From contig NC_083409.1 in NCBI RefSeq assembly GCF_020745735.1, positions 17,442,341 to 17,506,340 of the forward strand: a stretch of 64,000 nucleotides of DNA, written 5' to 3'. Shown piece after piece: positions 23,265 through 53,284 of the stretch (the first letter of the stretch is position 1; the number at the start of each line of letters is the position of its first letter). The notes beneath the pieces are model-generated. The model saw only the letters and a list, made by a program, of their open reading frames with translations. It was not told the DNA's origin and searched no databases. The translations under genes were made by a program, and so were the position numbers. Origin of the DNA: Hemiscyllium ocellatum. Taxonomy: Eukaryota.

Positions 23265-23295
23265 ACGTTCGGTGAAGGAACCAAGCTCAGGCTGA
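23265..23295 (+). pseudogene. IGKJ: Ig kappa J segment (TFGEGTKLRL-S)
   Basis: FGxGT motif; phase-1 donor A|GTAAGT at 23296; ~440 bp from V as in shark cluster genes. Confidence 0.9.
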
Positions 23296-23654
23296 GTAAG
23301 TAAACCTCAATCCTCCATTATTGAACCTGTCAATACTGAAACACAATTTATAAAACACAAATACTGAATTGTTGAAGTGTTGCAGTGAAGGAAATGTTTG
23401 ATTGAGGAACACCGCGTCCCATACGGTGTACACCTGTATTTCTTTAGTCCTATAACCCCATTAAAAAGCAAGATATAAGTCAGTAAGTTTTACTCATCGT
23501 GTGGAGGAGCTCTGTCCATTTGCAGCCTGTGGTCCCATTCCTGCAGCATGGAGTGAAATCAGTGAGTAGCCTCCTGCCAGTCTCAGTGTGACGGACACGG
23601 GCAGAGTTTGATGTGAGCTCTGGCTCCCTGTCCCAGTCTCTGATCTCACTGACC

Positions 23655-23708
<54 letters not shown>
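23655..23708. repeat. (GCA)18 trinucleotide microsatellite in the J-C intron
   Basis: Perfect repeat read directly. Confidence 0.95.
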
Positions 23709-23754
23709 CAGTGAGACACCGAGCTCCCACCTCCCCCAGCTTTAACTCTGCTCA

Positions 23755-26700
23755 ATCACATAATCACAGAATTGTCACATTGCACAAGGAGGCCATTCTG
23801 CCCATCCTGTCTGGACTGGCTCTCCGAATGAGCAATTCACTGAGTGTCATTCTCCTGCCTTCTCCCTGTCACCCTGCACATTGTTGCTTTTCAAATATCA
23901 GTCTCATTCCCTTCGGAATGTTTTAATTGAAGCTGCCTCCACCACACTCTCAGGCAGTGCACTCCACACCTTAACCACTCACTGGCCAAAATGTTGTTCC
24001 CCATCTCACTTTTGTGACTTTTCCCAATTGCCTTCAATCTGTGGTCTCTCAGTCTCAATCCTTTCTCTTGGGAACATTTTCTCCCTATTTACTGTATCCA
24101 GGCCCCTCCTGATTTTAATTCCTCCAACAAATCTCCTCTCAGCCTTCTCCAAAGAAGTCAGTCCCAAATTCTCCAAACTATCTTAATAACTGATGTTCCT
24201 CATCCCTGGAATGATCTTTGGGAATATTTTTTGCCATTTCTACAAAATTTCACCTGCTTCCTGAATGATTTACATTATCTATGTCCCTCATGATTTTATA
24301 AACCTCTGTAAGGTCACTCCTCAGACTCTTACACTTGAGGGAAAAAAGTCTCAGCTTTTCCAGCTGCTCATAGTCATGGAGTCATACAGCGTGGAAACAG
24401 ACATTTCAGTCCAACTTGCCTGAGTTAACCAGATCTCCTAAATGACCTCATCCCATTTGCCAGCATTTGGCTTACATCCCTCTAAACCCTTCCTATCCAT
24501 GTTCCCATCCCAATGTGTTTTAAATGTTGTAATTTTATCCGCCTCCAACGCTTTCTCTAGCAGCTCGATCCAGACACACACCACCCTCTGTGTGACAAGT
24601 TACCGCTCGGGTCCCTTTTGAATCTTTTGCCTCTCACCTTAAACCTATGCCCTCTTGTTTTGGACTCCCGTTCCCAAGGAAAAGACCTTGGATATACACC
24701 CTGTCCATGCCCTTCATGATTTTCTGCACATCCATAAGGTCACCCGAGGCCTTAGATGCTGCAGGGAAAATAGGCCCATTTCTTCAGCCTCTCCCGACAG
24801 CTGAAACCCTCCAATTCCTGGCCACATCCTTGTAAATCTTTTCCGCTGCCTTTTAAGTTTAACAACATCCTTCCTATCTCAGGATGATCAGAATTGTTCA
24901 CATTATTCCCAAAGTGGCCTCACCAACTGCTGTACAGCTGCAACATCATGTCCCAACTCCTATACTCAATGCAGTGACCAATAAAAGTAAGCATACCCAA
25001 CACCTTCTTCATCTCCCTGTCTACCTGTGACTCCACTGTCAAGGAATAATGCACCTGCACCTGCACCTTCACCCCTCGGTCTCTTTAGATTAGATTACTT
25101 ACAGTGTGGAAACAGGCCCTTCTGCCAACAAGTCCACACCGACCCGCCGAAACACAACCCACCCATACCCTACATTTGCCCCTTATCTAACACTACGGGC
25201 AATTTAGCATGGCCAATTCACCTGACCCACACATCTTTGGACTGTGGGAGGAAACCAGCACCCGGAGGAAACCCACGCAGACACAGAACGTGCAAACTCC
25301 ACACAGTCAGTCGCCTGAGTTGGAATTGAACCCGGGTCTCAGGCGCTGTGAGACAGCAGTGCTAACCACTGTGCCACCGTGCCCCCCATGTTGCTTTGTT
25401 GAGCAACACTCCACGGGTCCCTACCATTAACCGTAAAAGTCCTGCCCTGGTTTGGCTTTGAAAATGTATCTGAACATACTCTCACAATTCTCTCCCCTCC
25501 TGCCTGTTACACTGCTACTACCCCAGTCTATATTCAAAAATTAAAGAGCCATTTATAATGACTCTATCACGTTTGCAAGTATCTGCAAATTCCTTGCATT
25601 TGTATTCCTCTGCATCCTTCCCATTGGGTGGTGACTTATTGACTGCGGTGAGGATTCTGTGGTCCTTGGTGTTCCTCTCTGTTATTCCCTCCTGGCTCCC
25701 ACAGCCCTGCCAAGTTAGTTTAAACCCTCGCCAACTGCACTAGTAAATCACCCCAAAGGAACTCAGTCCCAGCTCGGTTCAGGAACAACACTGTCTGGTC
25801 TGTCCAGGTCCCATCTCCCCCAGACCCAGTCTCAATGTCCCAAGAATCTAAAGTCCTCCAACCTGGATCCTCTTTCCAGCTTCACATTCACCTGTGTTAT
25901 CCTCCTGTTCCTATTCTCACTTGGGTGGGGCACTGGGAGCAATCCGGAGATTCCAACTTTTGAGCTCCCAGTGCTCATTCCCTCCAGAGCCCCCTAAATT
26001 CTGACTGCAGGACCACATCCCTTTCCTCCCTCTGTCACTGGCACTGATGTGGACCATGACTGCTGACTGTTCTCCCTCTCCCCTCAGGGTGCTCTGCAGC
26101 CGCTCAGAGACATCCTTGACCCTGGCACCAGAGAGACAACACACCATCCTGGATTCCCATCTGCAACTGCAGAAACACCTATCGATTGCCCTCACTCTCG
26201 AATCTCCTCTCGCTATCCTTTTTCCTTGTGCCCCCCGTACAGCGGAACCCTCCACCTTGGTGCCAGGGACTTGGCTCTGGCTGCACATCAGAGATGAATC
26301 ATCATTCTCATCAGGATTCTGAACTGAATCCCAGTTGGAGAGTGTGATGCACTCAGGGGATTCCTCTACTACCTGCCTGGTCCTTTTGGACTGTCTACTG
26401 CTCCCCCATTCCCTCTCTCCCTGCATACGCTGAAACTGCAGAGTGACCACGTCTAGAAATATGTTCTCCATAGAGCTCTCAGCCTCACGGACGGTCTGCA
26501 CTGACACCAGCTACTGGTCACTGACCACACTTCCTGCACTCATGGTATTCCAGGAGCTAGGAAGCATTCTGAAGTTCCCACCTAAATGCACACTCTCTTC
26601 ACCCTTTGATCATCTCTTGGCAAAGTTCTGATGACAAACAGCTCCAGCAGGGCTCACAGTCCAGTGGGTTCAGTGTTCCAGGGTTTTGGGGAAACTGTCC

Positions 26701-32110: not shown

Positions 32111-33420
32111 GAAAAACTGTTTCTCCCATGTGTCTTCTGAACCACCTCACTGACCTGCATTCATTAGTCACCATGGCCACATCTTCCACCTCCACACACA
32201 TCTGACTTCCAGCCTCAAGCTGACGAGAGACATTCCTTCATTATCTGAGAAATGGACAGAAATATTAAACACAGGAGCAGCAGTAGGCCATTCGGCCCCT
32301 CAAGCCTGCTCCACCATTCAATATGATCATGGCCAATCAGGCAACACTGTCCCCTGTTCCTGCTTGCTCCCCACATTCTTTGAACTCATTAATCTTAAGA
32401 ACTGTATCTAATTCCTTCTTGAACACATACCGCATCTAATTCCCTCATGCTGGTAAATTGATGAGAAGTATTGAGTTGTTTTTTGACACAATGATCCGTT
32501 GGGCCTTTTGGGTCGCTCTGACTCTGACTCTATTATTATATGTTATGAATAACTGGGTACCAAGGACTGATCCCTGTGGTACCCCAACTGGGAAATATCT
32601 GCCATTCAGAAAAAGACTCATTCTTCCTGTCCTGTCTGCCAACCAGTTCTCAATCCGTGTCAGTACCTGACCCCCAATCCTCTTGTTTGTTGGGATTTCT
32701 TTGATTCAGTTGGACACAGTTAATCCTGTCTTTGCCTTCCTCAGGTCCTGTTCAATGTCACCCCTGCATTTTCGATCCTCCTCTGGGCTTTCTGCAGATA
32801 ACTCCAGAGAACCAACATCACCTTCCCTGTTTGGTCTTCCCTACTCTGGCTGCCTTTTGACATCCCAGGCTGAGAGTCTAGATTTGGGAGTCCCACCCTT
32901 ACTCATTGTGGGAAAAGATTCTGAACAATCTCTGTCTATTCTTTTGAGGGATCCCACTGCCCTGACACTGATTTCACATGATGGCGTTGGTTCTAGTCCA
33001 CTTTTACTAAATTATTGCAAAGTTTAGTAAAATAATTCATTCCCAAGTGAAAACGTTTACACTTGCTGCATGGTTCTCCATTTCCATCTCTACTCTCAAT
33101 CTCACTGAATTCTGATCACTGTCACTAAACTGCTCCCCCATTGATAGCACTTCCAGCTGCCCACATTCATTCCCTAAACAAGAGTCCAAACCTGTTCCTT
33201 GTCTTTCCCCATCACCTTCTCGGGGCAACTCGGGATGAGAAATAAATGCTGGCCCTGCTCGTGACACTCACTCCCAAGAAACAATTTAAACAACACCTGT
33301 TTTTTTTGTCGGGTTTGGTAGGTATTGGATACAAATGTTCAAACATTTTACCAGTGAATGTTCTGAGAGTTGAAGTTTCTTCAAATGGCAGGGATTAAAA
33401 TTGTTTCTTTTGTCTTTCAG

Positions 33421-33749
33421 GCCGTGAGAACTCTCAGCCCAAGCTGACCCTGCTGCCCCCCTCCCCGGAGCAGGTCAATGCCAAGGGCACTGCCACCCTG
33501 GGGTGCCTTGCCAATCACTTCAATCCCGATGAGCTGGAGGTTCAGTGGAAGAAGGACGGTGCAGTCATTACGGACGGGGATCAGACCAGCAACTACCTGC
33601 GAGCTTCGGACAGCACTGACAGTGTCAGCAGCCTGCTGACCCTCTCTGGGTCTGACTGGGAGTCCAACGCTCGCTTCTCCTGTGCCCTCACCCACGTGAC
33701 CCTCCCCTCTCCCCTCAGCAAGAGCATCAGGAGATCAGAATGTGTGTAG
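33421..33749 (+). CDS. IGKC: Ig kappa-type C exon (C1-set), open frame but probably part of a pseudo-cluster
   Basis: Acceptor TTTGTCTTTCAG, phase 1. (S)RENSQPKLTLLPPSPEQVNAKGTATLGCLANHFNPDELEVQWKKDG...STDSVSSLLTLSGSDWESNARFSCALTHVTLPSPLSKSIRRSECV*. Both domain Cys, the Trp and the interchain Cys are present. Confidence 0.92.
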
Positions 33750-35467: not shown

Positions 35468-35888
35468 TGAGATGGCAACTGAGAAAGGTGAATACTGAAA
35501 GTGTGTTCTCAGTAAGGGAGGGATTTCAGAGGCAGTGGGCACTGTGCTCCCTAATGTGTTGCCTGATTACAAGGGGATTTTCTGGATCCAGGGTCATTGC
35601 AGTTGTGGCTGCCTGCCCAGCCAGTGCTGACTACCCATAGTCATATTTCAATGGTCAATTAGCTCAAAACTACGTGCAGTAATATTACCTTACAGAGAGG
35701 GGAGCTGACTGAACGAGGGTGGTTGTATTCTTGCAGCCCCAAGGGGGGTTGCAGTGGATTAATGAAGGGTACGACTAACATGAAGGTGCCACCTTCTCTC
35801 CCCCTGCCTCAGCTGTGGTGACCCTTGGATTAAACTCACCACCATTTGGCTCTGTCTGTAATGAGTGAGTGGGACTATGCTCCTCTGG

Positions 35889-36187
35889 GATTAGATTAGA
35901 TTAGATTACCTACAGTGTGGAAACAGGCCTTTCGGCCCAACCAATCCACACCGACCGTCCAAACAGAAACCCACCCGACTCATTTCCCTCTGACTAATGC
36001 ACCTAAAACTATGGGCAATTTAACATGGCCAATTCACCTGATTTGCACATCTTTGGACTGTGGGAGGAAACCAGGGCAACCGGAGGAAACCCAGGCAGAC
36101 ACAGGGAGAATGTGCAAACTCCACACAGACATTCACCCGAGGCTGGAATCGAACCTGGGACCCTGGTGCTGTGAGGCAGCAGTGCTA
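35889..36187 (-). mobile_element. HE1-type SINE
   Basis: (AATCT)n tail and V-domain as in 25086-25386. Confidence 0.8.
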
Positions 36188-36606
36188 GCAGGGATGATAA
36201 CCACGTTCCTGGGTGATGGAGGGAAGGTCAACCTCTCCCAAAGGAAGCTCAAGCTGGATTGAAGGGGTATCAAGAATAAGCATGAGGAGATTGAGGGTAA
36301 CAGAAGGAGGGGGATGGTTGGCAGGTTGTTATTCAGAGTCAGGTAACAGAGTATCAGTCCTTCTGACACTCCCATTTTTATCTGTCAGCCAAGGCTCCCT
36401 GATTGGACAAGGTTAAACCCATCAGGGAACTCATATTTTATCAGGAAAAAAAACACTTATCGAACAAGGAGCGCAAGATCTAAAGGACACTGAACAATAT
36501 GAATGGTTTGAAAGATTCCTTTACGAACATCGCAAATGAGATTTGGGAAAGAACCTCTTTCACTCAGAGGGTGGTGGGAATCTGGAATGGACTGTCATAG
36601 AATTCC

Positions 36607-36932
36607 TACAGTGTGGAAACAGGCCATTTGGTGCAACACGTCCCGACCAATCCTCCGAAGAGAAATTCACCCGAGATCCACTCCCCTTGGCTATTTCCCC
36701 TGACTAACACACCTAAGTAACACATCCCTGAACACTATGGACAATTTTAGCATGGCCAATTCACCTAAGCTGCACATCTTTGGGTTGTGGGAGGAAACTG
36801 GAGCATACAGAGGAAAAACACACAGACACGGGGAGACTGTGCAAACTCCACACAGATACCCGGGGCTGGAATCGACCCGGGTCCCTAGTGCTGTGAGGCA
36901 GCAGTACTAACCACTGAGCCACCATGCCACCC
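36607..36932 (-). mobile_element. HE1-type SINE
   Basis: tRNA-like head GGCATGGTGGCTCAGTGGTTAG on minus; conserved core. Confidence 0.8.
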
Positions 36933-37874
36933 ATAAAAAAGCCCAAAGAGTTGAGATTTCATTCAGCTTCATGAGTCTGATGTGACACAAACTATAAACT
37001 CGCAACCCTCTGTCAGGGAAGGTAGTGGAGGGTAGATACCTTACAACCCCTGAATATCATAACATTCATGGATTTGGGACAACGGCAGGAAATTGGGATA
37101 AAAGTGCCTTCAGTTGTAATTATGTTCGTGCAGACTCAATGGGCCGAAATGCCTTTTCTATGTTGTATCTATGCTGAGAGGGCTCTGCAGGTTAATGGTG
37201 ACTAGTATAGGCTGTCGAGGGTGGAACATACATGATCAAGGTTCAGAGGAAATGGTTTAAGCTTCAGTGAAGGCCCAAGTAGGAGCTTGGAAGGAGGGTC
37301 AAGACTAATGGAAGCAAGGCCAATGGAGACTGAGAAAAAGCACAGAGCGCTGGCTGACATCTCCAGGGGTTGTCGTGAGGAATATGGGGACAAGAGGGGA
37401 GTGTGTAGGGAGTGAGTACAGTTTCAAATGAAATGCGACCTTTGCCAGCAGCAGCATGACCTTCAGCACCAGGGGGTGTCCCTGACTGTGTCAGGCTCAC
37501 TGACTGCTCTCTGTGTGATTCCACACAGCCACTCGTCTGGTCAACACGCAAAGTCTGGCACATGTTTATACTACTTGCTACAGCACAGTCTGCACCCAGC
37601 ATCTGCACCTTTTGTCGATGCCACTGTCCATACACACTGTCTGCACCCTCCGTTTACACCCCGTGTCCAAACCCACTGTCTACACCGCTGTCTGCACCCT
37701 CCATCCACACCTCCCATCTTTCTGCTGTTGTCAGATTGTATACAATGATTCCATTGAGCTTACTGCAACAGAAGCCTGAATTTTAGAACTGGCAATGATT
37801 GTCCTCTCACCCTGACCTTCAAAGTCTGTCTGCCATAATGAGGTGATTAATATTAATTACTGAATGCCATTTGA

Positions 37875-38385
37875 TTTCTGTGAAGGCAGGACTGATGTAT
37901 AAAGAGAGGTTGAGTTGGTGAGGATTGTGTTCATTGGAGTTTAGAAGAATGAAGGAAGGGAATCTTGTACAAAGGTATAAAATTGGAACAGGATGAGACA
38001 TGTTAGATGGAGGAAGGATGTTCCAAATGGTGGGGAAGTCCAGAACCAGGGCTCATAGTTTAAGGTTAAGGGGTAAACTCTATAGGATAGAGATGAGGAA
38101 AAATGTTTTCACCCAGAGAGTGGTGAGCCTGTGGAATTCTCTGTCACAGAAAGTTGTTGAGGCCAAAACATTATGTTTTCAAGAAGGGGGTAGAGATAGC
38201 TCTTGTGGCTAAAGATTCAAGGGATATGGGGTAGGGAGGGATTACAGTGTAGTGCTCGATGATCAGCCATGACCATAGATAGATTCTTGGTGACTGAAGG
38301 GATGAAACATTATCAGAGAATGTAGAGTTGAGGTTAAAATCAGATCAGCCATAAGGGCCGAGTGGCCTACTTTTGTTCCTTGCCC
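37875..38385 (+). mobile_element. CR1 3'-end fragments
   Basis: EMRKNVFTQRVVSLWNSL motif and tail. Confidence 0.7.
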
Positions 38386-38630
38386 ATATGTTGCCTCATA
38401 CACTTTCACACAATCAAAGACTGTCATTTGCATATTCTACATGCAGATGAAGCTGCTTGTGCAATAGGCCTCATCTGTACAGTGTTTTGTCCAGCCTTTC
38501 ACCATCATATGTTTAGGATAATGGTCCCATAATCAATCCATTAACTTTGTAAGTTAGTTTAGTTAAAGCAATAACACACATTACAAGTCGTGAAGCAGAC
38601 ATTACAGCAAGCAAGAATGGACTGCACTGA

Positions 38631-38939
38631 GGCTCAGTGGTCAGCACTGCTGTCCCACAGCACCAGGGACCCAGGTTCGATTCCAGCCTCGGGCAACTGT
38701 CTGTTTGGAGTTTGCACATTCTCCCCGTGTCTCTGTGGGTTTCCTCTGGATGCTCCGGTTTCTTCCCACAGTCAAAGGATATGCAGGTTCGGTGAATTGG
38801 CCAAACTAAATTGTCCATCGTGTTCAGGGATATGTGGGTTAGGTGCAGAAGTCAGAGAATATGTAGAGTAATGGGGTGGGGGAGTGGGATGCTCTTTGGA
38901 GGGTCAGTGTGGAGGCCTATTTCCACACTGTAGGGATTC
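38631..38939 (+). mobile_element. HE1-type SINE
   Basis: GGCTCAGTGGTCAGCAC...GGTTCGATTCC head; GGGTTTCCTCTGGATGCTCCGGTTTC core. Confidence 0.8.
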
Positions 38940-39226
38940 AGCGAATTGATCTTGGTCTGTGCAGCTTGCAGGCTCACAGATGACTAACTGGTGGGTAGAG
39001 TTCAACACTGTACATACACAGGGATGGATTTTCTTAAAGGTAATGTGTTCATACAGCACACAGCTACTGAACATCAAGGCAAGACAGTTACATTCTCTCT
39101 TGTTGGAGACAGTCATTGCCTGGCAGCTGTGTGGCCCAAATGTAACCTTATTCATGTTCCAAACCCACATCTCTATCAATAAAATGCTTTGGAACATCCT
39201 CAGGTAACAAAAAGTGCTATACATTT

Positions 39227-39551
39227 GGGGTGGCACGATGGCTCAGTGGTTGGCACTGCTGCCTCACAGCATCAGGGACCCGCCTCAGACAGGTCTGTGT
39301 GGAGTTTTCACGTTCTCCCTGTATCTGCGTGAGCTTCCGCCAGGTACTCTGGCTTCCTCCCACTGTCCTAAAGATCTGCAGGCTGGTAAATTGGCCATGC
39401 TAAATTGCCTACAGTGTCCAGGGATGAGCAGGCTAGGTGGATTAGCCATTGGAAAATACAGGGATAGCATCGGGGTCTGGATGGAATGCTCTTCAGAGGG
39501 GTGGTGTGTACTCGATAGGCTGAATGGCCTACTTCCATACTATAGGGATTT
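39227..39551 (+). mobile_element. HE1-type SINE
   Basis: GGCACGATGGCTCAGTGGTTGGCAC head and conserved core. Confidence 0.75.
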
Positions 39552-39660
39552 TGTGATACAAATGAAAGTTCCTTCTTTCCATTCTAGCCCTGGAGCATAC
39601 ATGTGGTTCTGTCTCATATCCACTCAAGAGATGGCAATTCTTTGAAGACAGGAGCAGCCT

Positions 39661-39781
39661 CTATTCTTTTGGAAAGTACTTCTTCCACTCTGTGTCCTTC
39701 ACAGCCTTGTAGACAGCAACAATGAGGTCGGGAAATAACCTAAAGCTATAATCTTCTGGACTCTTCATTAAACTGTGGAAC
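39661..39781 (-). pseudogene. RNASEL: RNase L (KEN domain) terminal coding exon
   Basis: Acceptor ATTGTACTTTTCAG, 1 nt plus [39 protein letters not shown]. Matches the recalled mammalian RNase L end ([22 protein letters not shown]). Phase fits the exon at 45324-45448. Confidence 0.8.
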
Positions 39782-40099
39782 CTGAAAAGTACAATTAATG
39801 TCCAAGTCAATGAAGATATTTCTCAGCAATCCCTAAATGCTGAGGTTTAGTACTCAGCAGGCCCCAGGAGTCAAAATAACCGAGTTGATCATTGCTCTGA
39901 ATTGCTCATAAATGTCACCTTCACATTTCTGGAGGCTTTGATCAAAAAGGTTGCTTACTCCTCTCCAAAATACAGCTTAAAATCAGCTCCAACTCCCAAC
40001 CGTCCAGCTGAGAGCGGAGCCCTGTACAAACTGGAACCTGGTCAGTGGGAGCACTGTCACCTCTGTCTCAGAAGCTTTGTCTATTTAAACCAGTGTCTT

Positions 40100-40900
40100 A
40101 GTCAGAGAGTCATTCAGCACGGAAACAGACCCTTCGGTTCAACTCATCCATGCCAACCAGACATCCTCATCTAGTTCCATTTGCCATGATTTAGCCCTTA
40201 TCCCTCTAAACCCTTCCTGTTCATGGACCCATATAAATGATGTAATTGTACCAGCTTCCACCACTTCCACTGGCAGCTCATTCCGTGCATGCACCATCCT
40301 CTGCATGAAAAGTTGCCCCTTAGTTCCTTTACAAATTCTTCCTCTATCACCTTAAACCTATGCCGTCTAGTTTTGGACTGACATACCCTGGGAAAAAGAC
40401 CTTGGATATTCACCTTATCGATGCGCTTCATGATTTTATAAACCTCCATAAGTTCACCCCTCAACCTCCAATGCTCCAGGGAAAGTAGCCCCAATCTATT
40501 CAGCCTCTCCTTGTAGCTCAAACCAGCAACATCCTTGCAAATCTTTATTTGCCCCCTTTCAACTTGAACAACATTATTCCTAGAGCAGGAAGACCAGAAC
40601 TGAGCCCTGTATTCTCAAGGTGTCCTCACCAATGGCCACTTTGGTGGACAGCCAGAACATGACATCCCAACTCCTATACTCAATGCATGGACCAATAAAG
40701 GCAAGTGTACCAATCACCTTCGTCACTACCCTGTTTATCCATGGCTTCACTTTGAAGGAACTGTGAGCCTGCACTCCAAGGTCTCTTTGCTCAGTAACAA
40801 TCTCCAGGAACCTGCCCTGATTTGCCTTCCCAAAAAGCAATGCCTTACACTTATCTAAATTAAACTCCATCTCCCACTCCTTGCCCATTGGCCCATCTGC
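40100..40900 (-). mobile_element. CR1 3' portion
   Basis: WEMEFNLDKCKALLFGK..., SYKERLNRLGLLSLEHWRLRGELMEVYK. Confidence 0.85.
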
Positions 40901-41099
40901 AGACGCATTGATCATACATTACAAACCAGAACATATGGAAGACATTGGTGAGACACAACTGCAGTATTGTGTCCAATTGTGGTCTGCTTATGAAATTAGA
41001 TTACTTACGTATGGAAACAGGCCCCTCGACCCAACAAGTCCATACTGACCCTCCGAAGAGCATCCCACCCAAACCCATTCCCTTACACCTTACACCATT

Positions 41100-43130
41100 T
41101 GAGGAAGGATGTGGTGGCACTGGAGGCTGTTCAGAGGATGTTCCCCAGACTGATCCCAGGGATGAAAGGGCTGTCCTATGAGGAGCAGTTAAATAGATTG
41201 GGCTTGTACTCACTGGAGTTCAAAAGAATGAGGAGGGATCTGACTGAGGGATAGAAAATGTGAAAGGGATTGATAAGGAGGACGTTGAATAGATGCTCCC
41301 CCTTGTGGGACAGTCTGGAACAAGAGGTCATCGATATCGAGTGAGAGGAGGTTGGTTCAAAACTGAGATGAGGAGAAACTACTTCTCCCAGAGGGTTGTG
41401 AATCTGTGAAACTCAATGCCCCAGAGTGCAGTGGAGGCAGAATCAATCAATAGGCTCAAGAACGATGTGTTTCTGATTAAACATGAGATAAAGAACAAGG
41501 GGGAGCAGGCAGGAGAGTGGAATTGAGACAGGATAAGATCAGCCACGGCCATGTTAAATGGCGGAGCGGGGTCAAAGGGCTGAATTGCCTCCTCCCGCTC
41601 CTAATTCCGATGTTGAGCACACAGTCAAGGCTGACACTGCAAAACTGAGGGAGCTGTTGTCTTTCAGGTGAGATACAAAACAGAGATCCTGCCACAGTAC
41701 ATCGAACTGTACTATCTCCCCAGTGACAAGTGCTGGAATTTGAATTCAAATCACAAAGCAAGCCTCATTAATGGTGACCACAATAATGATCCCTGAATGC
41801 TGTCCAGCCTCAGCCTTACCCAGTCTGGACTTCATGTGACTCCAACCCCACAGCAATCTGGTTAACTCTTAGATGCCTTCTGAGAGGCCACAGCAAGGCC
41901 AGCAGTTCAAGGATAATTAGTCTTGGGCAACAAATGGTGATCTATGCCATTGACACCCACCTCCCAGAAACCAGAAGGCAAAGGAGATTGGTGTCAGCCA
42001 AAATTGTCAGATTAGACTCCCAATGAGATGGGGAGATGCTTCAAATGAATTCAGCTCAGTATGGAACAGGTCCCCACTTGTTAACCCATCATCACTGACA
42101 AAATAAGGGGAGAACACAGAAAACTAAAGGTGAGAACACTCAAATGTGGGAATATCAGTGAGAATTCAGGCAACTAAAGGAAGATATGAAGAACTGCAAA
42201 GGAAGACAAAAAGGAAGCAAGAGTTACAAAAAAGTGATTGAGAGAGAGACCTGCAAGGGGTCACAAGAATAACACAAATGCTTTACACGAAAATTAGAAA
42301 ATCAAGGAGGCTCCAGTGCAATGTGAGCCCTTTAAAAACAAACTGGGAATTCCATGAATGAGACTAAGGGAATGGCCGATGTGAACAATAATTAGTTGTG
42401 TCGGTCTTCACAGTCAAAACACGGGATAATGCAGCTTCCACTCCAGGGAGGTTAATAATGAATGGAAGATTTGAATTCACAATAGTTGATACTTGCCAGA
42501 AAACAGCATTGTAAAGCGAGTAGCTCTAAAGGCTGAAAGATCTCCAGGACCTTAGGAGTTTAAAGGAAGGGGGGGAAGAAGTTTAAGAGGCTTTTCCCAT
42601 CAGATTCCAAAGCAGTAACGATTCCTTTAGTTTGGAAAATGTCTTGCTGTAACTCCACGGGTTGAAGAAAGATGAGCGAGGGAACCGAGGAAATTATATC
42701 CTGGTCAATCTAACATCTCTTTTAGGGGTTTCATTGGAATCTATAATTAACAGCCGAGAGAATGAACATGTACAGAATTGGAAATAGCCCACATAGATTT
42801 GTGATGGGTAAGTTCTAACTAACAAACCGAATGCATTAAATAAAATAGTTGATAGGATGTATAGGCTTATCAGCTTTCAGAAGTACTCGATCATTTTCCA
42901 CGAAACAGTCTGCTGACCAATATTAAAACCCATGGGATTGAAGATGAATGTTTGACTTGGTTCAGAGGCTGGTTCAGTGACAGACAACAGAGAAAGAAAG
43001 TGACGAGTGGTGTTCCACAAGGATTCTGTGGTGAGGCCTTAACTACTTACTGTATGTATTAATGAGAATCATAGTTCCACATTGACACAAAGACTGATGG
43101 AATAGTAAGCGGTGAAGATGGTGTTTTTGT
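41100..43130 (+). mobile_element. Old CR1 fragments (3' end 41100-41620; RT 42150-43130) and a SINE/LINE tail
   Basis: Degenerate CR1 3' and RT nucleotide motifs. Confidence 0.6.
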
Positions 43131-43194
43131 TTAAAACTCACTTGGAGGACATGGGTGTTGCTGTCTGGGCAAAATTCCTAGTTGCCCTCGAGAA

Positions 43195-43527
43195 TCATAG
43201 AATCATTATATGGTGTGGAAGCAGGCCATTCAGCCCATCAAGTTCACACCAACCCACCAAACAGCATCCCATCTAGATCAGCCCCATCCTTGTAATGCTG
43301 CATTTCCCATGGCTAATCCACCCTGCCTGCACATCCCTGGACACGACGTGCAATTTAGCATGGCTAATCCACCAAACCTGCACATCTATGGATTGTGTGG
43401 AGGAAACTCACTCAGACATGGGGAAAATGTGCAAACTCCAGACAGACAGTCATCCCAGGATGGATTTGAACCCAGGTCCCTGGCGCTGTAAGGGAGCAGC
43501 ACTAACCACTGACCCACAATGCTGCCC
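43195..43527 (-). mobile_element. HE1-type SINE
   Basis: Conserved core GTGCAAACTCCA...; tRNA-like head at the right end. Confidence 0.75.
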
Positions 43528-44057
43528 TTTGCAAGGTGGTCGTGAGCTGTCTTCTTGAACCGCTGCAGTCCATGTGCTGTAGATAAACCCACAATGCCCT
43601 AAGGGAGGGAAGTCCAAGATTTTGACCCAGCGACCCTGAAGGAACAGTAGTATATTTTCAAATCAGGATGCTATGTAGATTAGAGTGGAACTTGAAGGTG
43701 GTGGTGTTCTGTGTATCTGCTGCCCTTGTCCTTCAAATGGAAATGGCCTTGGGTTTGGACTGTGCTGTCTCAGGAGACTTGGTGGATTTCTGCAGAGCAT
43801 CTTGTTGATGGTGCACACGGCTGCTACTGAGTATCAGTGGTGGAGGGAGTGAATGTTTGTGGATGTGGTGCCAATCAGGCAGGTTGCTTTGTACTGGATG
43901 ATATCAAGCTTCTTGACTGTTTTTGGAGCTGTGCCCATCCAGGCATGTGGGGAGTAATCCATCACACTCCAATCCAAAGCTTGACTGATCTTTTCTTAAT
44001 TTATTTACGGGATTGGGCATCACATGGTATGCCAGCATTTTTTGCCCAGAATCAAGT

Positions 44058-44902
44058 GGGGTGGCACAGAGACTAGCACTGTTGCCTCACAGCTTAGGGA
44101 CCTGAGTTCGATTCCTCGGGCAGCTGATTTTGTGGCGTTTACACATTCTCCCTGTGTCGGCCTGGGTTCCCTCCAGGTGATCTGGTTTCCTTCCACAGTC
44201 CAAAAATGCGTGGGATCGTTGGAATAGCCATGGGAAATGCAAGGTTATAGGGGAGTGGGTCTGGGTGAGATGCTCTTTGGAGAGGCAGTATGGGCTGAAT
44301 GGCCTGTTTCCATTGTAGGGATTCTATTGATTTCTTCACTCAGAGGAATCTTTGGAATACTCATCTCCAGATACTTAGTCAGTACTTAGTAATTTGAATA
44401 AATTCAAGATAGAGCTCACCTGCATGTGGGGCGGCAATGGCCTAGTGGTATCATTACAAGATTGTTAATCCAGCGAGCCAAGTCATGTCTGGGGGACCTG
44501 GGTTCAAATCCTGGCAAAGGCACGGAGTGGAATTTAAATTTTAAAAATCTCAAATTAAGAGTCTAATGATGACAATTGGTTGGGGAGAGTCCCATTGAGC
44601 CCACTAAAGTCCTTTAGACTGCTGCCCTGGTGTCATACTAACTGACATATCACTGCAGACCCACATCAATGATGAATCATCAAATCCCTAGTGTGTGGAA
44701 GAAGGACATTCAGCCCACAGCCACCTCCCTCTCCTATCCCTGGAGCATTACACGTCCCATGGCTGATCCACCTATCCTGCACATCTTTGGATTGAGAGAG
44801 GAACCCCCCACAGACATAGGGAGAACATGCAAACTCCACACAGACAGTTGCCTGAGGGTGGAGTCGAACCCAGGTCCCTGGTGTTGTCAGGCAGTGGTGA
44901 TA
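44058..44902. mobile_element. SINE cluster: HE1 (+, 44058-44326), second-family SINE (+, 44428-44670), HE1 (-, 44690-44902)
   Basis: tRNA-like heads and family-specific cores. Confidence 0.7.
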
Positions 44903-45323
44903 GCTGCTGTGACCCCCATTCCACATCGGAGATCGAAACGTCTAACCCCTTATTCCCAGACTGGGTCTCAGCTTTAGAATTCCCAAATAGCGGCAGATCC
45001 TCCCAAAATCTACCCTGTCAGGTCCCTGGAGAATTTGAAATGTTTCATTGAAATCTCCTCCCAACCTTCTAAATTCCAGGGATGAGATCTGCAATTTCCT
45101 CCTGGCTTCCCAGAGAATCTGAGGATAAATCCCGTTCCTCACCCAGTCCCCTCTCTCGATCATGAGACAATCCTCTCAACCCTTCACATGAACTGTTGTT
45201 GGGTTTGATCATCTCAGTAAGAGTTTCAAGGAGGGAAGGAGAAAGAAAGACTCTTTCTGCTTTGAATCAATGCTAAAAGTTGACAAAGCAGGAAAATATT
45301 GCCACCAACTATTGTTAACATAC

Positions 45324-45448
45324 TCTTTCTATTCATCAAAGTGTTGGATGAGGTTTCTTATGAATTTCAGGAGGTCACTGGTGGTGTCCTTGTATTCTTT
45401 ATTCTTGCCTTGTCTCTTGTTCATGTCATTCAGGAGAACGGAGTCATC
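45324..45448 (-). pseudogene. RNASEL: RNase L penultimate exon (catalytic KEN segment) with in-frame stop
   Basis: Acceptor [55 protein letters not shown] plus GA|GTATGT. Recalled human [22 protein letters not shown]. TAG at 45331-45329. Confidence 0.82.
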
Positions 45449-45514
45449 CTCGAAGGAAATGAACAACAGAGTTTGTTTTCTCTGTTGATTGAATTCACCT
45501 TGCTTGCTCCTCTG

Positions 45515-45596
45515 ATCACCTGAAGAAGGGGCAAGGCTTGTGTCCTATAATAAACCTGTTGGACTATAACCTGGTTTCGTTTGATTTTTGACCTTG
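45515..45596 (+). mobile_element. Penelope-like fragment, second family, hammerhead partly deleted
   Basis: CACCTGAAGAAGGGGC...AATAAACCTGTTGGACTATAACCTGG. Confidence 0.6.
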
Positions 45597-46405
45597 GGGA
45601 TTTCTGGATACAAGGTGTTCAGTAAAGATAGGAAAGAGAGAAAATTGCGAGAAGTGGTGGGACTGTTCTGAAGCCAGACAGTGCTGACCAACGTTAGGCC
45701 CTGAGATATGATGGAGATGAAGGGTGAACTGTGCCAGGCTTTAACTCACTGTTACCAGAGTAAAACAGGGATTACCCAGTTCACAAGAGAGTAAATGGAA
45801 CTAACAAACCAGGTACGTGAGAAACACCCACCCTGTCCCTGAGAGAGGGGGACAAGAACAGGGACATTCTCAGACAGAAAGGATGCTAAAAATGGGATCA
45901 CCCCGAGAGTGAAGGGTGGGGTGGAGACAGTGACAGCGACACTCCCCCAGAGAGTGGGGAAAGTAACACTGACACATTTAAAACTATATTATCACAAGTG
46001 AAAATTCAAACAGCCACCCACTCCATCATATGGTGTTGAAGATGCACTATCCTCATCAAAACATGTTTGCAAACCTCTTCACAACACGTAAGGGGAGAGA
46101 AACATTGAAAACTGTATTATCACGAGTGAGGGTCCATTTAAAACTTGGACCATGATGTTAAATGTTCCCAGCCGTAAACAACACTGGTGTATTGATGTCA
46201 TTATCTTATTGAACAATATTAAAACCTCGGTCAAACATTTTCCTGCAGACAGTGTATTTAAAATATCAAGAGGGTTTCCGCATTGTTGGTTTGATCAGTG
46301 ACGTAGCAAGGAAGCAGCAGCTGCCCCATGAACTCCAACAAAAGAATGAGCACAGCCTCTTCATATGGAGCTGGCTCCCGAGAATCCAATTCAACAGCAG
46401 GGACC

Positions 46406-47857: not shown

Positions 47858-48034
47858 ATGGAATGCCCTGCCAGTAACAGTGGTGGACTCTCCCTCTTTA
47901 TGGGCATTTAAACGGGCATTGGATAGGCATATGGAGGATAGTGGGCTAGTGTAGGTTAGGTGGGCTTGGATCGGTGCAACATCGAGGGCTGAAGGGCCTG
48001 TACTGCGCTATATTTTTCTATGTTCTATGTTCTA
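47858..48034 (+). mobile_element. 177-bp CR1 3' tail, near-identical to 52495-52671
   Basis: About 7 differences by manual comparison; (TTCTATG)n tail. Confidence 0.85.
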
Positions 48035-48788: not shown

Positions 48789-51700
48789 CATGTTTGAGGT
48801 GAGGGATGCCATGGTCGTCCCTGCTGATTACACTTGCAGGAAGTGCACCCATCTCCAGCTCCTCCAAGACCATGTTAGGGAACTGGAGCTGGAGTTGGAT
48901 GAACTTAGGATCATTCGGGAGGCAGAGGCGGTCATAGATCGGAGCTTTAGGGAAGTAGTAACTCCAAAGATTGCAGACAGGTGGGTGACCAGAGGGGGAC
49001 TGGGAGGAAGCAGCCAGTGCTGAGACCCCCTGCGGCCATTCCCCTCAAGAACAAGTAGACCGTTTTGGATACTTGTGGGGGGGAATGACTTACCAGGGGT
49101 AAGCAATGGGGTTCAGGCCCCTGGCACGGAGTCTGTCCCAGTTGCTCAGAAGGGAAGTGTGGAGAAAAGCAGAGCAATAGTTGTTGGAGACTCGATAGTT
49201 CGGGGGGGGCACAGATAGGCGGTTTTGTGGGGGCGAGAGAGACTCACATTTGGTATGTTGTGTCCCAGGTGCAAAGGTACGTGATGTCTCTGATCATGTT
49301 TTCCGGGTCCTTAAGAGGGCGGGGGAGCAGCCCGATGTCGTGGTCCACATTGGCACAAACAACATAGGTAGGAAGAGGGATGAGGATGTTAGGCAGGTTT
49401 TCAGGGAGCTAGGTTGGAAGCTCAGAGTTAGAACAAACAAAGTTGTTGTCTCTGGTTTGTTACCCGTGCCACGTGATAGAGAGTCGAGGAATAGGGAGAG
49501 AGAGCAGTTAAATGCGTGGCTACTGGGATGGTGCAGGAGGGAGGGATTCCAGTTTCTGGATAACTGGGGTTCTTTCTGGGGAAGGTGGGACCTCTATAAA
49601 CAGGATGGTCTATACCTGAACCTGAGGGGCACCAGTATCCTTGAGGGGAGGTTTGCTAGTGCTCTTTCAGGGGGTTTAAACTAACTTTGCAGGGGCATGG
49701 GAACCTAGACTGTAGATTTAGGGTGCAGGACCTGGAGTGTAGGGAGGTTAGGAACATGGCATCAATCTCGAAGGAGGGTGCCTGTAATCAGGAAGGTGGC
49801 TTGAAGTGTGTATACTTCAATGTGAGAAGTATACGAAATGAGGTAGGTGAACTTGCAGCGTGGGTTGGTACCTGGGAGTTCAATGTTGTGGCTATTTCGG
49901 AGACATGGGTAGAACAGGGGCAGGATTGGTTGCTGCAGGTTCCAGGGTTTAAATGTTTTAGTAGGGTCAGAGGTGGGAGTAAAAGAGGGGGAGATGTGGC
50001 ATTGCTTGTCAAAGATAGTATTACAGCAGTGGAAAGGACGATGGATAAAGACTCGCCATCTGAGGTAGTTTGGGATGAGCTCAGAAATAAGAAAGGTGAG
50101 GTCACCCTGTTAGGAGTTTTCTACAGGCCTCCTAATAGTCCTAGAGATGTAGAAGAAAGGATTGCGAGGATGATTCAGGAGAAGAGTGAAAGTAATAGGG
50201 TGGTTGTTATGGGGGACTTTAACTTTCCAGATATTGACTGGGAAAGCTATAGCTCGAGTACGTTAGATGGGTTGGTGTTTGTCCAATGTGTGCAGGAGGG
50301 TTTCCTGACACAATATGTAGACAGGCCAACAAGAGGTGAGGCCATACTGGATTTGGTTCTGGCTAATGAACCAGGCCAGGTGTTAGAATTGGAGGTAGGT
50401 GAGCACTTTGGGGACAGTGACTACAATTCGGTGACTTTTACTCTAGTGATGGAGAGGGATAAGTGTGCACTACAGGGCAAGAGTTATAGCTGGGGGCAGG
50501 GAAATTATGATGCGGTGAGGCATGACTTAGGATGCGTGACTTGGAAAAGTAGGCTTCAAGGGAAGGGTGCAATCGATATGTGGAGCTTGTTCAAGGAGCA
50601 ACTATTGAGTGTCTTTGATAAGTATGTACCTGTCCGGCAGGGAGGAAAGGGTCATGTGAGGGAGCCGTGGTTTAATAAGGAATTGGAATCCATTGTTAAA
50701 GGGAAGAGGGCGGCCTATGTAAAGATGATGCGTGAAGGTTGATTTGGGGTGATTGAGAGTTATAAGGTAGCCAGGAAGGATCTAAAGAGAGAGCTAAGAG
50801 CAGCAAGGAGGGGATATGAAAAGTCCTTGGTTGGTAGGATTAGGGAAAACCCAAAGGCTTTCTAAAGGTATGTCAGGAATAAAAGAATGACTAAGGTAGG
50901 AATAGTAGTGGGAAGTTGCGTGAGGAGTAGTCCAGTCAAGGATAGAAGTGGGAAGTTGCGTATGGAGGCTGAAGAAATTGGGGAGACACTGAATGAATAC
51001 TTTTCGTCAGTATTCACTCAGGAACAGGACATTGTTGCCGATGTGAATTTTGAGTCACAATTAATTAGAATGGATGGCTTTGAGATATGTAGGGAAGAGG
51101 TGTTGGAAATTCTGGAAAGGGTGAATATAGATAAGTCCCCTGGGCCTGATGGCATTTATCCTTGGATTCTCTGGGAAGCCAGGGAGGAGATTGCAGAGCC
51201 ATTGGCCTTGATTTTTATGTCCTTGTTGAATACAGGAATAGTGCCAGAAGACTGGAGGATAGCAAATGTGGTTCCCTTGTTCAAGAAGGGGAGTAGGGAT
51301 AACCCTAGTAACTATAGGCCAGTGAGTCTTACCTCTGTTGTGGGCAAAGTCTTAGTGAGAATTGTAAGGGATAGGATTTATGAACATCTGGATAGGAATA
51401 ATGTGATCAAGGATAGTCAGCATGGTTTTGTGAAGGGCAGGTCGTGCCTCACAAACCTTATTGAATTCTTTGAGAAGGTGACTAAGGAGGTGGACGAGGG
51501 TAAAGCGGTAGATGTGGTGTGTATGGATTTTAGTAAGGCATTTGATAAGGTTCCCCATGGTAGGCTACTGCAAAAAATACGGAGGTATGGCATTGAGGGG
51601 AGTTGGAGGTTTGGATTAGGAATTGGCTGGCTGGAAGAAGACAGAGGGTAGTAGTTGATGGTAAAGGTTCATCTTGGAGTGCAGTTACCAGCGGTGTTCC

Positions 51701-52671
51701 ACAAGGATGTGTTTTGGGACCATTGCTGTTTGTCATTTTTATAAATGACCTGGAGGAGGGGCTAGAAGGTTGGGTGAGCAAGTTTGCGGATGATACGAAA
51801 GTCGGTGGAGTTGTTGACAGTGAGGAAGGATGTGGCAGGTTACAGCGGAATATAGATAAGCTGCAGAGCTGGGCAAAAAGGTGGCAAATGGAGTTCAATA
51901 TAGGTAAGTGTGAGGTGACTCACTTTGGTAAGAGTAACAAGAAGATGGAGTACTGGGCTAATAGTCAGATACTTGGTCGTGTGGATGAGCAGAGGGTTCT
52001 TGGTGTCCACGTACATAGATCTCTGAAAGTTGCCACCAGGTAAATAGTGCTGTGAAGAAGGCATATGGCGTACTGGCTTTTATTGGGAGAGGAATTGAGT
52101 TCCGGAGTCCTGAGGTCATGTTGCAGTTGTATAAGACTCTAGTGCAGCCGCATCTGGAGTATTGTGTGCAGTTTTGGTCGCCATACTATGGGAAGGATGT
52201 GGAGGCACTGGAACGGGTGCAAAGGAGGTTTACCAGGATGTTGCCAGGTATGGTAGGAAGATGATATGAGGAAAGGCTGAGGCACTTGGGGCTGTTTTCA
52301 TTGGAGAAAAGAAGGTTTAGGGGTGACTTGATAGAGGTGTACAAGATGATTAGGGGTTTAGATAGGGTTGACCATGAGAACCTTTTTCCACGTATGGAGT
52401 CAGCTATTATGAGGGGTCATAGCTTTAAATTAAGGGGTGGTAGGTATAGGACTGATGTTAGGGGTAGATTCTTTACTCAGCGAGTCATGAGTTCATGGAA
52501 TGCCCTGCCAGTAACAGTGGTGGACTCTCCCTCTTTATGGGCATTTAAACGGGCATTGGATAGGCATATGGAGGAAAGTGGGCTCGTGTACTTTAGGTGG
52601 GCTTGGATCGGTGCAACATCGAGGGCTGAAGGGCCTGTACTGCGTTGTATTTTTCTATGCTCTATGTTCTA
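48789..52671 (+). mobile_element. Near-full-length young CR1 (HER1-like) LINE
   Basis: ORF1 Zn-finger/coiled-coil (YTCRKC...LELELDELRII) and esterase (VVVHIGTNNIG). ORF2 APE (ISETW, GDFNFPDIDW, SDY) and RT (QHGFVKGRSCLTNL, VPQGCVLGP, FADDT), broken by only a few stops/frameshifts. Intact tail. Confidence 0.97.
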
Positions 52672-53284
52672 TTTACGCTTCGCGCCCCCATTTCCATCCT
52701 TGCTTGTTGCCCTTCCCTAACTGTCCTGGAGAGGGCGGTGGTGAGCCATGAGTGTCTCGAAGAGGATCTGACAGAGGGACAAGGTCATGTCTTCGGCCTG
52801 AGCACAACTGCCTGACCTGCTGTGCTTTTTCAGCGCCACATTTTTTGACTCTGAGCACAACGATCCCTCAGCAGAATGAACTGTGACACAAGAGGAAACT
52901 TGGGAGTGTTGGAAAGGCACCGGCAGCCTGGTCAGCCTGCAGAGGGGCAGAAACAGATTTGATGAATGAGCTGGTATCCTCCCGAGCTGAGATGCAGACT
53001 CAGGCCTTCAGAGCCACACAGTTTACATTGTTACTGACCGTGGCTCCATGGGCAATGTTCCTGCCTCATCATCAAAATGGTCATCGGATTGAAAGCCACC
53101 TCAGAAATGAGAGCACAGAATCCAGGCTGAGACTGTGGTGCACTGCTGAAAGTTGCACAGTCTCTGGCACCATCATTTGAGGCTCCACCACCACCACACC
53201 CCGACCATCCCCACCCCCACCACAGGAGGCTTGACAAGATCCCATTCTGAAGAGATTCTCTCGGGTATCCTGCTCAAAGGTGTT

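What the first reader, a model, noticed from the sequence alone, without database searches (positions are those of the whole stretch)
39661..45448. Hidden RNase L (2-5A-dependent ribonuclease) KEN-domain exons in a shark
Seen: two short minus-strand exons absent from the ORF track. They splice in frame (phase 2 donor GA|GT, 1-nt start at the next acceptor) to give ...[62 protein letters not shown]. Established: human RNase L has Y655, R667, N668 and H672 in [18 protein letters not shown]; the spacing here is identical, and IRE1 (DLLRAMRNKKHH) fits worse. The OAS/RNase L pathway is characterised mainly in tetrapods. Inference: evidence for an RNase L lineage in cartilaginous fish with a mammal-like 3' exon structure.
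Basis: partly seen in the sequence, partly recalled or inferred. Interest (0 to 1): 0.75.

Follow-up and report, generated by a model that had tools for sequence, protein, structure and literature searches.

The report
Dead RNase L gene tail copy
The two exons are real remains of the shark antiviral RNase L gene, but only the gene's last two exons were copied here beside an antibody light-chain gene and the copy carries a stop codon, so this is an ordinary dead gene fragment.

Summary
Two minus-strand exons (45324-45448 and 39661-39781) join in frame, hit the Pfam KEN/Ribonuc_2-5A model collinearly, and match RNase L, not IRE1, among solved structures. The Y/R/N/H nuclease motif is present.

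They are not a gene. A full-length shark RNase L used as query finds only its last ~80 residues in the 64-kb window. There are no ankyrin, kinase or N-terminal KEN exons. DNA homology to the real Chiloscyllium punctatum RNase L locus starts about 240 bp upstream of the penultimate exon. It runs through the retained intron and at least 4 kb of 3' flank at 87.6% non-coding identity. An AAG (Lys) codon has become TAG.

An intact immunoglobulin light-chain constant exon lies tail-to-tail 5.9 kb downstream. This is a truncated segmental-duplicate pseudogene, probably carried along with an Ig light-chain cluster. A third copy sits on another C. punctatum contig. This scan has already reported the same cassette several times elsewhere in this genome.

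RNase L in cartilaginous fish is already published (PNAS 2023, tested for Callorhinchus) and annotated by NCBI in many sharks and rays.

One point is unexplained. The exons and their intron flanks are 2-3 times less diverged than the surrounding DNA, in every copy compared.

Interest is low.

The parts
45324..45448 (-). Copy of the penultimate RNase L coding exon (KEN domain, with the Y..[9 protein letters not shown]..H nuclease motif). Both splice sites are intact.
   Evidence: It is 96.9% identical in DNA to exon L001:37398-37526 of the real C. punctatum gene.
45329..45331 (-). In-frame TAG. The real gene has AAG (Lys) here.
   Evidence: Side-by-side exon sequences. All 15 RNase L proteins compared, 13 elasmobranch and 2 tetrapod, have K at this position.
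39661..39781 (-). Copy of the last RNase L coding exon (C-terminal KEN helices), including the native stop TAG at 39661-39663.
   Evidence: It is 95.8% identical in DNA to L001:42897-43016.
39782..45323 (-). Retained intron between the two exons (5.5 kb, full of SINE and LINE fragments). Its presence shows a DNA-level duplication, not retroposition.
   Evidence: Collinear blastn blocks window 43921-45596 / L001 37241-38967 and window 39068-40395 / L001 42275-43603. The middle of the intron faces an N run in L001 and was not compared.
45449..45687 (-). Remnant of the upstream intron. Homology to the real gene ends at 45687. Window 45688-46400 matches neither L001 nor anything else in the window.
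35533..39660 (-). 3' flank co-duplicated with the exons. It is collinear with the 3' flank of the real gene as far as that contig reaches.
   Evidence: Blocks at 84-89% identity.
33417..33746 (+). Intact immunoglobulin light-chain constant exon (C1-set, ends ...RRSECV*), tail-to-tail with the RNase L remnant.
   Evidence: translation; PF07654 C1-set, E 3.9e-18; antibody light and heavy chains in PDB, best E 9.5e-44.
23265..23295 (+). J-like segment (T FGEGTKLRL, followed by GTAAGT) about 10 kb upstream of the C exon. No recognisable heptamer precedes it.

Best explanation
This is a non-functional, truncated segmental-duplicate copy of the 3' end of the shark RNase L gene. A stretch of genomic DNA was duplicated at the DNA level. 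It ran from the intron before the penultimate coding exon, through the last two exons and their intron, into the 3' flank, and probably on to the neighbouring Ig light-chain cluster. The copy lacks the 2-5A-sensing ankyrin repeats, the pseudokinase domain and the first third of the KEN domain. It has since gained a nonsense codon and two further amino-acid replacements. It cannot make an RNase L.

Shown: the identity of the exons, the truncation, the stop codon, the non-coding collinearity with the real gene, the adjacent Ig C exon, and at least one further copy in C. punctatum.

Inferred: that the Ig cluster and the RNase L tail moved together as one unit, and that the copy is not expressed.
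For: - KEN identity.
- Closest relatives are annotated shark RNase L proteins with ANK-Pkinase-Ribonuc_2-5A architecture. The fragment differs from Chiloscyllium plagiosum RNase L at 3 of 81 codons, counting the stop, and from C. punctatum at 4 (my count on the alignment after removing one extra codon in my splice join; 95% by tblastn).
- tblastn with Mustelus (P0002) and C. punctatum (P0016) full-length proteins, and blastn with all six coding exons seen in the real gene, find only the last two exons in the 64-kb window. In the real gene the preceding exon lies only 1.7 kb upstream.
- Window 35533-45687 is collinear with the real locus L001 36692-50766. Non-coding substitution identity is 87.6% over 6,105 aligned sites. 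The blocks contain SINE-like repeats.
- Homology ends inside the upstream intron.
- AAG became TAG, and V->D and G->R occur in the copy only.
- An intact Ig C1-set light-chain exon lies 5.9 kb beyond the RNase L stop on the other strand.
- A third, separately diverged copy of the last exon sits on C. punctatum contig BEZZ01055574.1. It is about 87% identical to both the window and the real gene.
Against: - All four splice signals are still intact.
- The exons and their near flanks are less diverged (4.1% and 6.4%) than the rest of the duplicated DNA (13.0%). This could hint at constraint or gene conversion.
- The real gene's contig ends before the position where an Ig C exon would lie. That the founding arrangement was RNase L tail-to-tail with an Ig cluster therefore rests on this window and on earlier unchecked scan notes.
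Confidence: 0.9

Rival explanations
1. This is the 3' end of a working RNase L paralogue. Its upstream exons lie more than 18.5 kb away, outside the window, and the TAG is an assembly error or a rare allele.
For: Splice sites are intact, the catalytic motif is intact, and only three codon changes separate the fragment from Chiloscyllium plagiosum RNase L.
Against: In the real gene the previous exon is 1.7 kb upstream. Here, similarity to the real gene's intron stops 240 bp upstream of the exon and is followed by unrelated DNA and LINE fragments. No other RNase L exon is in the window. All three replacements on this lineage are non-synonymous and one is a stop.
Confidence: 0.03
2. The fragment is dead as a coding sequence, but the exon-proximal blocks are kept similar for another reason. 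Either recurrent gene conversion with the working gene or among copies does it, or the blocks serve a non-coding role for the adjoining Ig light-chain cluster, such as a 3' regulatory element or terminal exons of a non-coding transcript.
For: The exons plus 100-320 bp of flank are 2-3 times less diverged than the rest (Fisher p about 5e-6 for exons and 2e-6 for near flanks, each against the rest). The three least-diverged 250-bp non-coding windows out of 45 all flank the exons. In the three-way comparison the working gene is no more conserved than the two dead copies: 9 lineage-specific changes against 8 and 10.
Against: The contrast is moderate (6-7% against a median of 11.6%, with other windows at 8.4-8.8%). 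The fast-evolving comparison DNA is rich in SINEs. Only three sequences were compared, and there is no expression or chromatin evidence.
Confidence: 0.06
3. The exons derive from IRE1/ERN or another KEN-domain family rather than RNase L.
For: IRE1 shares the DLL..RN...H motif (established knowledge).
Against: No IRE1 chain was matched even at E<=10, while RNase L chains were. The exons are 95% identical to annotated Chiloscyllium RNase L with ANK-kinase-KEN architecture.
Confidence: 0.005

Closest known systems
Chiloscyllium punctatum / C. plagiosum '2-5A-dependent ribonuclease-like' (XP_072429488-94, GCC19658.1, XP_043555869-72); real locus BEZZ01001581.1
   Same: The last two coding exons are 96-97% identical in DNA and 77-78 of 81 codons match. 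The intron position and phase are the same, and the intron and 3' flank are collinear.
   Different: The window copy lacks the four upstream coding exons seen in the real gene (ankyrin repeats, pseudokinase, N-terminal KEN). It carries a TAG in place of Lys plus V->D and G->R, and its non-coding DNA is about 12% diverged.
Mammalian RNase L (human 4OAU/4OAV, pig 4O1O)
   Same: The KEN nuclease motif Y..[10 protein letters not shown]..H and the C-terminal FPDL...Y......E..K.FP helix align without gaps.
   Different: Only the last ~80 residues are present, and they are about 50% identical. There is no sensor or dimerisation domain, so 2-5A-dependent activation is impossible for this fragment.
Other 'dead RNase L tail + Ig light-chain C' cassettes reported by this scan in the same genome (s1-228436, s1-228427, s1-213621, s1-219755, s1-237809)
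   Same: The content (last two KEN exons only) and the tail-to-tail partner (an Ig light-chain C exon) are the same as those notes describe. My own tests on this window agree.
   Different: Here the Ig C exon is intact, and the RNase L exons keep their splice sites and carry a single stop.
IRE1/ERN1 KEN domain
   Same: It has the same Pfam family (PF06479) and the same catalytic chemistry.
   Different: It is not the source of these exons.

Membership tests
RNase L (2-5A-dependent ribonuclease), functional gene | KEN / Ribonuc_2-5A domain | tested here: inconclusive
   Only profile positions 45-78 and 95-125 of 127 are encoded. The first third of the domain is absent from the window.
RNase L (2-5A-dependent ribonuclease), functional gene | Nuclease residues (Tyr, Arg, Asn and His of the Y..[9 protein letters not shown]..H motif) | tested here: met
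   Aligned without gaps to pig and human RNase L. The human residue numbering is from memory.
RNase L (2-5A-dependent ribonuclease), functional gene | N-terminal ankyrin repeats that bind 2-5A | tested here: not met
   tblastn with P0002 and P0016, and blastn with the large exon of the real gene, find nothing in the window.
RNase L (2-5A-dependent ribonuclease), functional gene | Pseudokinase domain | tested here: not met
   Same searches, no hit.
RNase L (2-5A-dependent ribonuclease), functional gene | Uninterrupted reading frame | tested here: not met
   TAG at 45331-45329 where the real gene has AAG.
RNase L (2-5A-dependent ribonuclease), functional gene | Closer to RNase L than to IRE1 | tested here: met
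   PDB hits are RNase L only. The exons are 95% identical to annotated Chiloscyllium RNase L.
RNase L (2-5A-dependent ribonuclease), functional gene | Transcribed, and cleaves RNA when given 2-5A | not testable with these tools
The cleavage assay is a bench test.
Non-processed (segmental-duplication) pseudogene fragment | Intron and flanking non-coding DNA are homologous to the parent gene | tested here: met
   10 kb is collinear with L001, with 87.6% non-coding identity.
Non-processed (segmental-duplication) pseudogene fragment | Truncated relative to the parent, with a defined breakpoint | tested here: met
   Homology ends at window 45687 / L001 36692, inside the intron.
Non-processed (segmental-duplication) pseudogene fragment | Disabling mutation | tested here: met
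   Lys became a stop.
Non-processed (segmental-duplication) pseudogene fragment | Neutral evolution of the copy | tested here: inconclusive
   There are 3 copy-specific replacements against about 5 synonymous differences in 81 codons, too few to test. The exon-proximal DNA is less diverged than the rest in all lineages.

The most novel reading that the evidence does not exclude
The RNase L tail fragments that travel with shark Ig light-chain clusters may not be inert debris. Their exon-proximal blocks stay 2-3 times more similar than the surrounding DNA in every copy compared. One possible reason is gene conversion with the working antiviral gene, which would make the copies a reservoir of KEN-domain variants. 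Another is that the blocks have been taken over as a cis-regulatory element 3' of the light-chain constant exon.
Probability: 0.06. Interest if true: 0.55.

Novelty: new member of a known kind. Interest (0 to 1): 0.15.

Why it matters
It matters little for RNase L biology. The gene family, its presence in cartilaginous fish and its function there are already published and annotated.

The fragment has some value as a marker. A truncated RNase L tail attached to an Ig light-chain cluster records that the clusters multiplied by segmental duplication of a block that once lay next to RNASEL. A catalogue of such tails, with shared breakpoints and shared lesions, could give a family tree and rough dating for shark light-chain cluster expansion.

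It is also a warning for annotation. KEN-domain hits in this genome are mostly dead tails, not extra RNase L genes.

Tried and rejected
- IRE1 origin: rejected.
- Hidden intact gene: rejected, because no upstream exon is in the window (motif regexes, tblastn and blastn).
- The search of protein representatives with the 39-residue piece gave only two significant hits. One was useful: Mustelus RNase L.
- The look-up of encoding contigs returned no DNA for the chromosome-level assemblies of Mustelus and C. punctatum and no record for isoform P0007. Only the older C. punctatum contigs could be read. These have N runs that I left alone.
- The light-chain isotype could not be named. The C-exon search returned only fragments, two of them labelled as bacterial proteins and probably contamination.
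- Regex searches found no V segment and no convincing RSS next to the J-like segment.
- 'Constraint on the parent gene only' was rejected as the explanation for the low exon divergence. In the three-way comparison the parent is no more conserved than the copies.
- Literature searches linking RNASEL or CEP350 with shark light-chain loci found nothing relevant.
Full report
**What is there.** On the minus strand, exon A runs 45448..45324. It has a polypyrimidine tract and AG at 45450-45449, and a donor GT at 45323-45322. Exon B runs 39781..39661. It has the acceptor TTTTCAG| and a stop TAG at 39663-39661. Exon A ends in phase 2 (GA|) and exon B supplies one base. The window holds no N.

**Family.** The two pieces were searched apart.
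- Both hit Pfam PF06479 (Ribonuc_2-5A/KEN) collinearly, at profile positions 45-78 (E 6.5e-5, 23.5 bits against a cut-off of 23.3) and 95-125 (E 0.01).
- Against all PDB sequences, each piece matches only pig RNase L (4o1o) and human RNase L (4oau), at E 0.001-0.03. No IRE1 chain appears even at E<=10.
- The alignment to pig RNase L ([18 protein letters not shown]) shows the Tyr, Arg-Asn and His of the nuclease motif in place. The human residue numbers Y655, R667, N668 and H672 are from memory. They fit the 4oau chain, which reads N at the His position.

**Closest relatives.** An exhaustive search with exon A found an 811-residue Mustelus asterias protein that NCBI names '2-5A-dependent ribonuclease-like'. 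It has ankyrin, Pkinase and Ribonuc_2-5A domains. Searching with its KEN region found the same annotated gene in Scyliorhinus (two species), Heterodontus, Carcharodon, Chiloscyllium, Narcine, Hemitrygon and Mobula. The Chiloscyllium cluster also holds C. plagiosum and Hemiscyllium ocellatum. The window peptide is nearly identical to the hemiscylliid proteins. By my count on the alignment, after removing one extra codon in my splice join, 78 of 81 codons match C. plagiosum and 77 match C. punctatum and Hemiscyllium, against about 55 for Mustelus. The window therefore comes from a bamboo-shark-like genome, or the copy arose in that lineage.

**Not a gene.**
- tblastn with the Mustelus and C. punctatum full-length proteins finds only residues about 736-811 (766-845 in the C. 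punctatum protein) in the whole window.
- blastn with each coding exon seen in the real C. punctatum gene finds only the last two.
- The real locus could be read from an older assembly (L001 = BEZZ01001581.1). It has one large exon (residues 26-589) and five small ones. The exon before the penultimate one lies only 1.7 kb upstream.
- Window 35533-45687 (minus) is collinear with L001 36692-50766. This covers the last ~700 bp of the upstream intron (less a 460-bp segment present only in L001), both exons, the intron between them (its middle faces an N run in L001, which I left alone) and the 3' flank to the end of that contig.
- Beyond window 45687 there is no similarity to the real gene. About 700 bp of unique DNA follow, then LINE fragments.
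- Retained intron and flanks show a DNA-level segmental duplication, not a retrocopy.
- Non-coding substitution identity is 87.6% over 6,105 aligned sites, so the copy is old.

**Lesions.** Against the real gene the exons differ at 10 of 246 bases. The proteins of the other sharks were used to decide which lineage changed. The copy's own changes are GTT->GAT (V->D), AAG->TAG (K->stop) and GGT->AGG (G->R). The N/S difference is a C. punctatum change in the working gene. About five differences are synonymous. All four splice signals survive.

**Surroundings.** On the plus strand at 33417-33746 there is an intact Ig constant exon...PKLTLLPPSPEQVNAKGTATLGCLANHFNPDELEVQWKKDG...RFSCALTHV...RRSECV*. 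It hits the C1-set model at E 3.9e-18 and antibody chains in PDB at E down to 9.5e-44. It lies tail-to-tail with the RNase L remnant, 5.9 kb from its stop. A J-like segment (T-FGEGTKLRL, then GTAAGT) lies at 23265-23295, but no canonical heptamer precedes it and no V was found. I could not name the light-chain isotype.

Earlier notes of this scan report the same arrangement at several other places on the same sequence, and a probable working RNase L gene 6.9 Mb away. Those notes call the partner kappa and mention CEP350 fragments. They are unchecked AI notes. They led me to look for the C exon. What I tested here on this window agrees with them: truncation to two exons, the stop codon and the tail-to-tail C exon.

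Independently, a third copy of the last exon exists on C. punctatum contig BEZZ01055574.1 (P0023/L002). It is about 87% identical to both the window and the real gene and has its own replacements.

**How it works.** It does not work as RNase L. RNase L needs the ankyrin repeats to bind 2-5A and the pseudokinase to dimerise before the KEN domains cut RNA (established from the solved structures 4OAU, 4OAV and 4O1O). None of these is encoded here, and the remaining KEN part is interrupted. The most likely history is as follows. An Ig light-chain cluster lay just downstream of RNASEL. A duplication unit with one end in the RNASEL intron was copied, perhaps many times. The RNase L tail decayed while the Ig part could stay in use. 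The co-transport step is inferred.

**Unexplained.** Between the copy and the real gene, the exons differ at 4.1% of sites and their non-coding flanks of 100-320 bp at 6.4%. The rest of the aligned non-coding DNA differs at 13.0%, or 11.7% without CpG sites. In the three-way comparison over the last exon, lineage-specific changes in exon plus near flanks (345 sites) are 8 (window), 9 (working gene) and 10 (L002). In the next 348 bp they are 25, 24 and 32. The working gene is thus no more conserved than the dead copies, and intron is as conserved as exon, so coding constraint is not the cause. Remaining options are a local mutation-rate difference (the fast part is SINE-rich), gene conversion among copies, or a non-coding role. 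I favour the first two. The data cannot decide.

**Novelty.** PMC10400998 (PNAS 2023) reports RNase L in all major jawed-vertebrate lineages except ray-finned fishes. It showed in yeast that Callorhinchus milii OASa and RNase L work together, and it ran selection analyses on Chondrichthyes. NCBI annotates the gene in many elasmobranchs. I found no paper that links RNASEL or CEP350 with shark light-chain clusters in the held library, which is not proof that none exists.

**Limits.** The chromosome-level assemblies could not be read. The other copies in this genome were not available to me.

Noticed in passing
window 33417-33746 (+): An intact Ig light-chain constant (C1-set) exon, ending ...RRSECV*, with a good acceptor. 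The J-like segment is 10 kb upstream and lacks a canonical RSS heptamer. No V segment was found in the window. This may be an orphan or decaying cluster with a preserved C exon.
   Followed up: partly
window 39580-40100 and 45126-45500: The blocks around the two RNase L exons, intron included, are 2-3 times less diverged from the real gene than the rest of the duplicated DNA. The same holds for a third copy (L002). The cause is not resolved: mutation-rate difference, gene conversion or a non-coding function.
   Followed up: partly
protein P0001 (Larimichthys crocea TMS01848.1, 449 aa): A ray-finned-fish protein with three tandem partial KEN (PF06479) domains and no ankyrin or kinase part, although ray-finned fishes are reported to have lost RNase L (PMC10400998). 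It may be a mis-prediction or a KEN-only family.
   Followed up: no
window 49250-52720 (+): A long LINE element with endonuclease and reverse-transcriptase reading frames in several large pieces (144, 351, 254, 146 and 144 aa ORFs). It looks young. A 143-bp stretch of it (52495-52637) matches 47858-48000 at 97%.
   Followed up: no
window 23480-23755 (-): An ORF with a run of 18 alanines, which is a GCN trinucleotide repeat. It lies next to purine-rich low-complexity DNA just upstream of the J-like segment.
   Followed up: no
L001 36781-37240: The real C. punctatum RNase L intron holds a 460-bp segment absent from the window copy. It is an insertion in the gene or a deletion in the copy, and was not characterised.
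   Followed up: no
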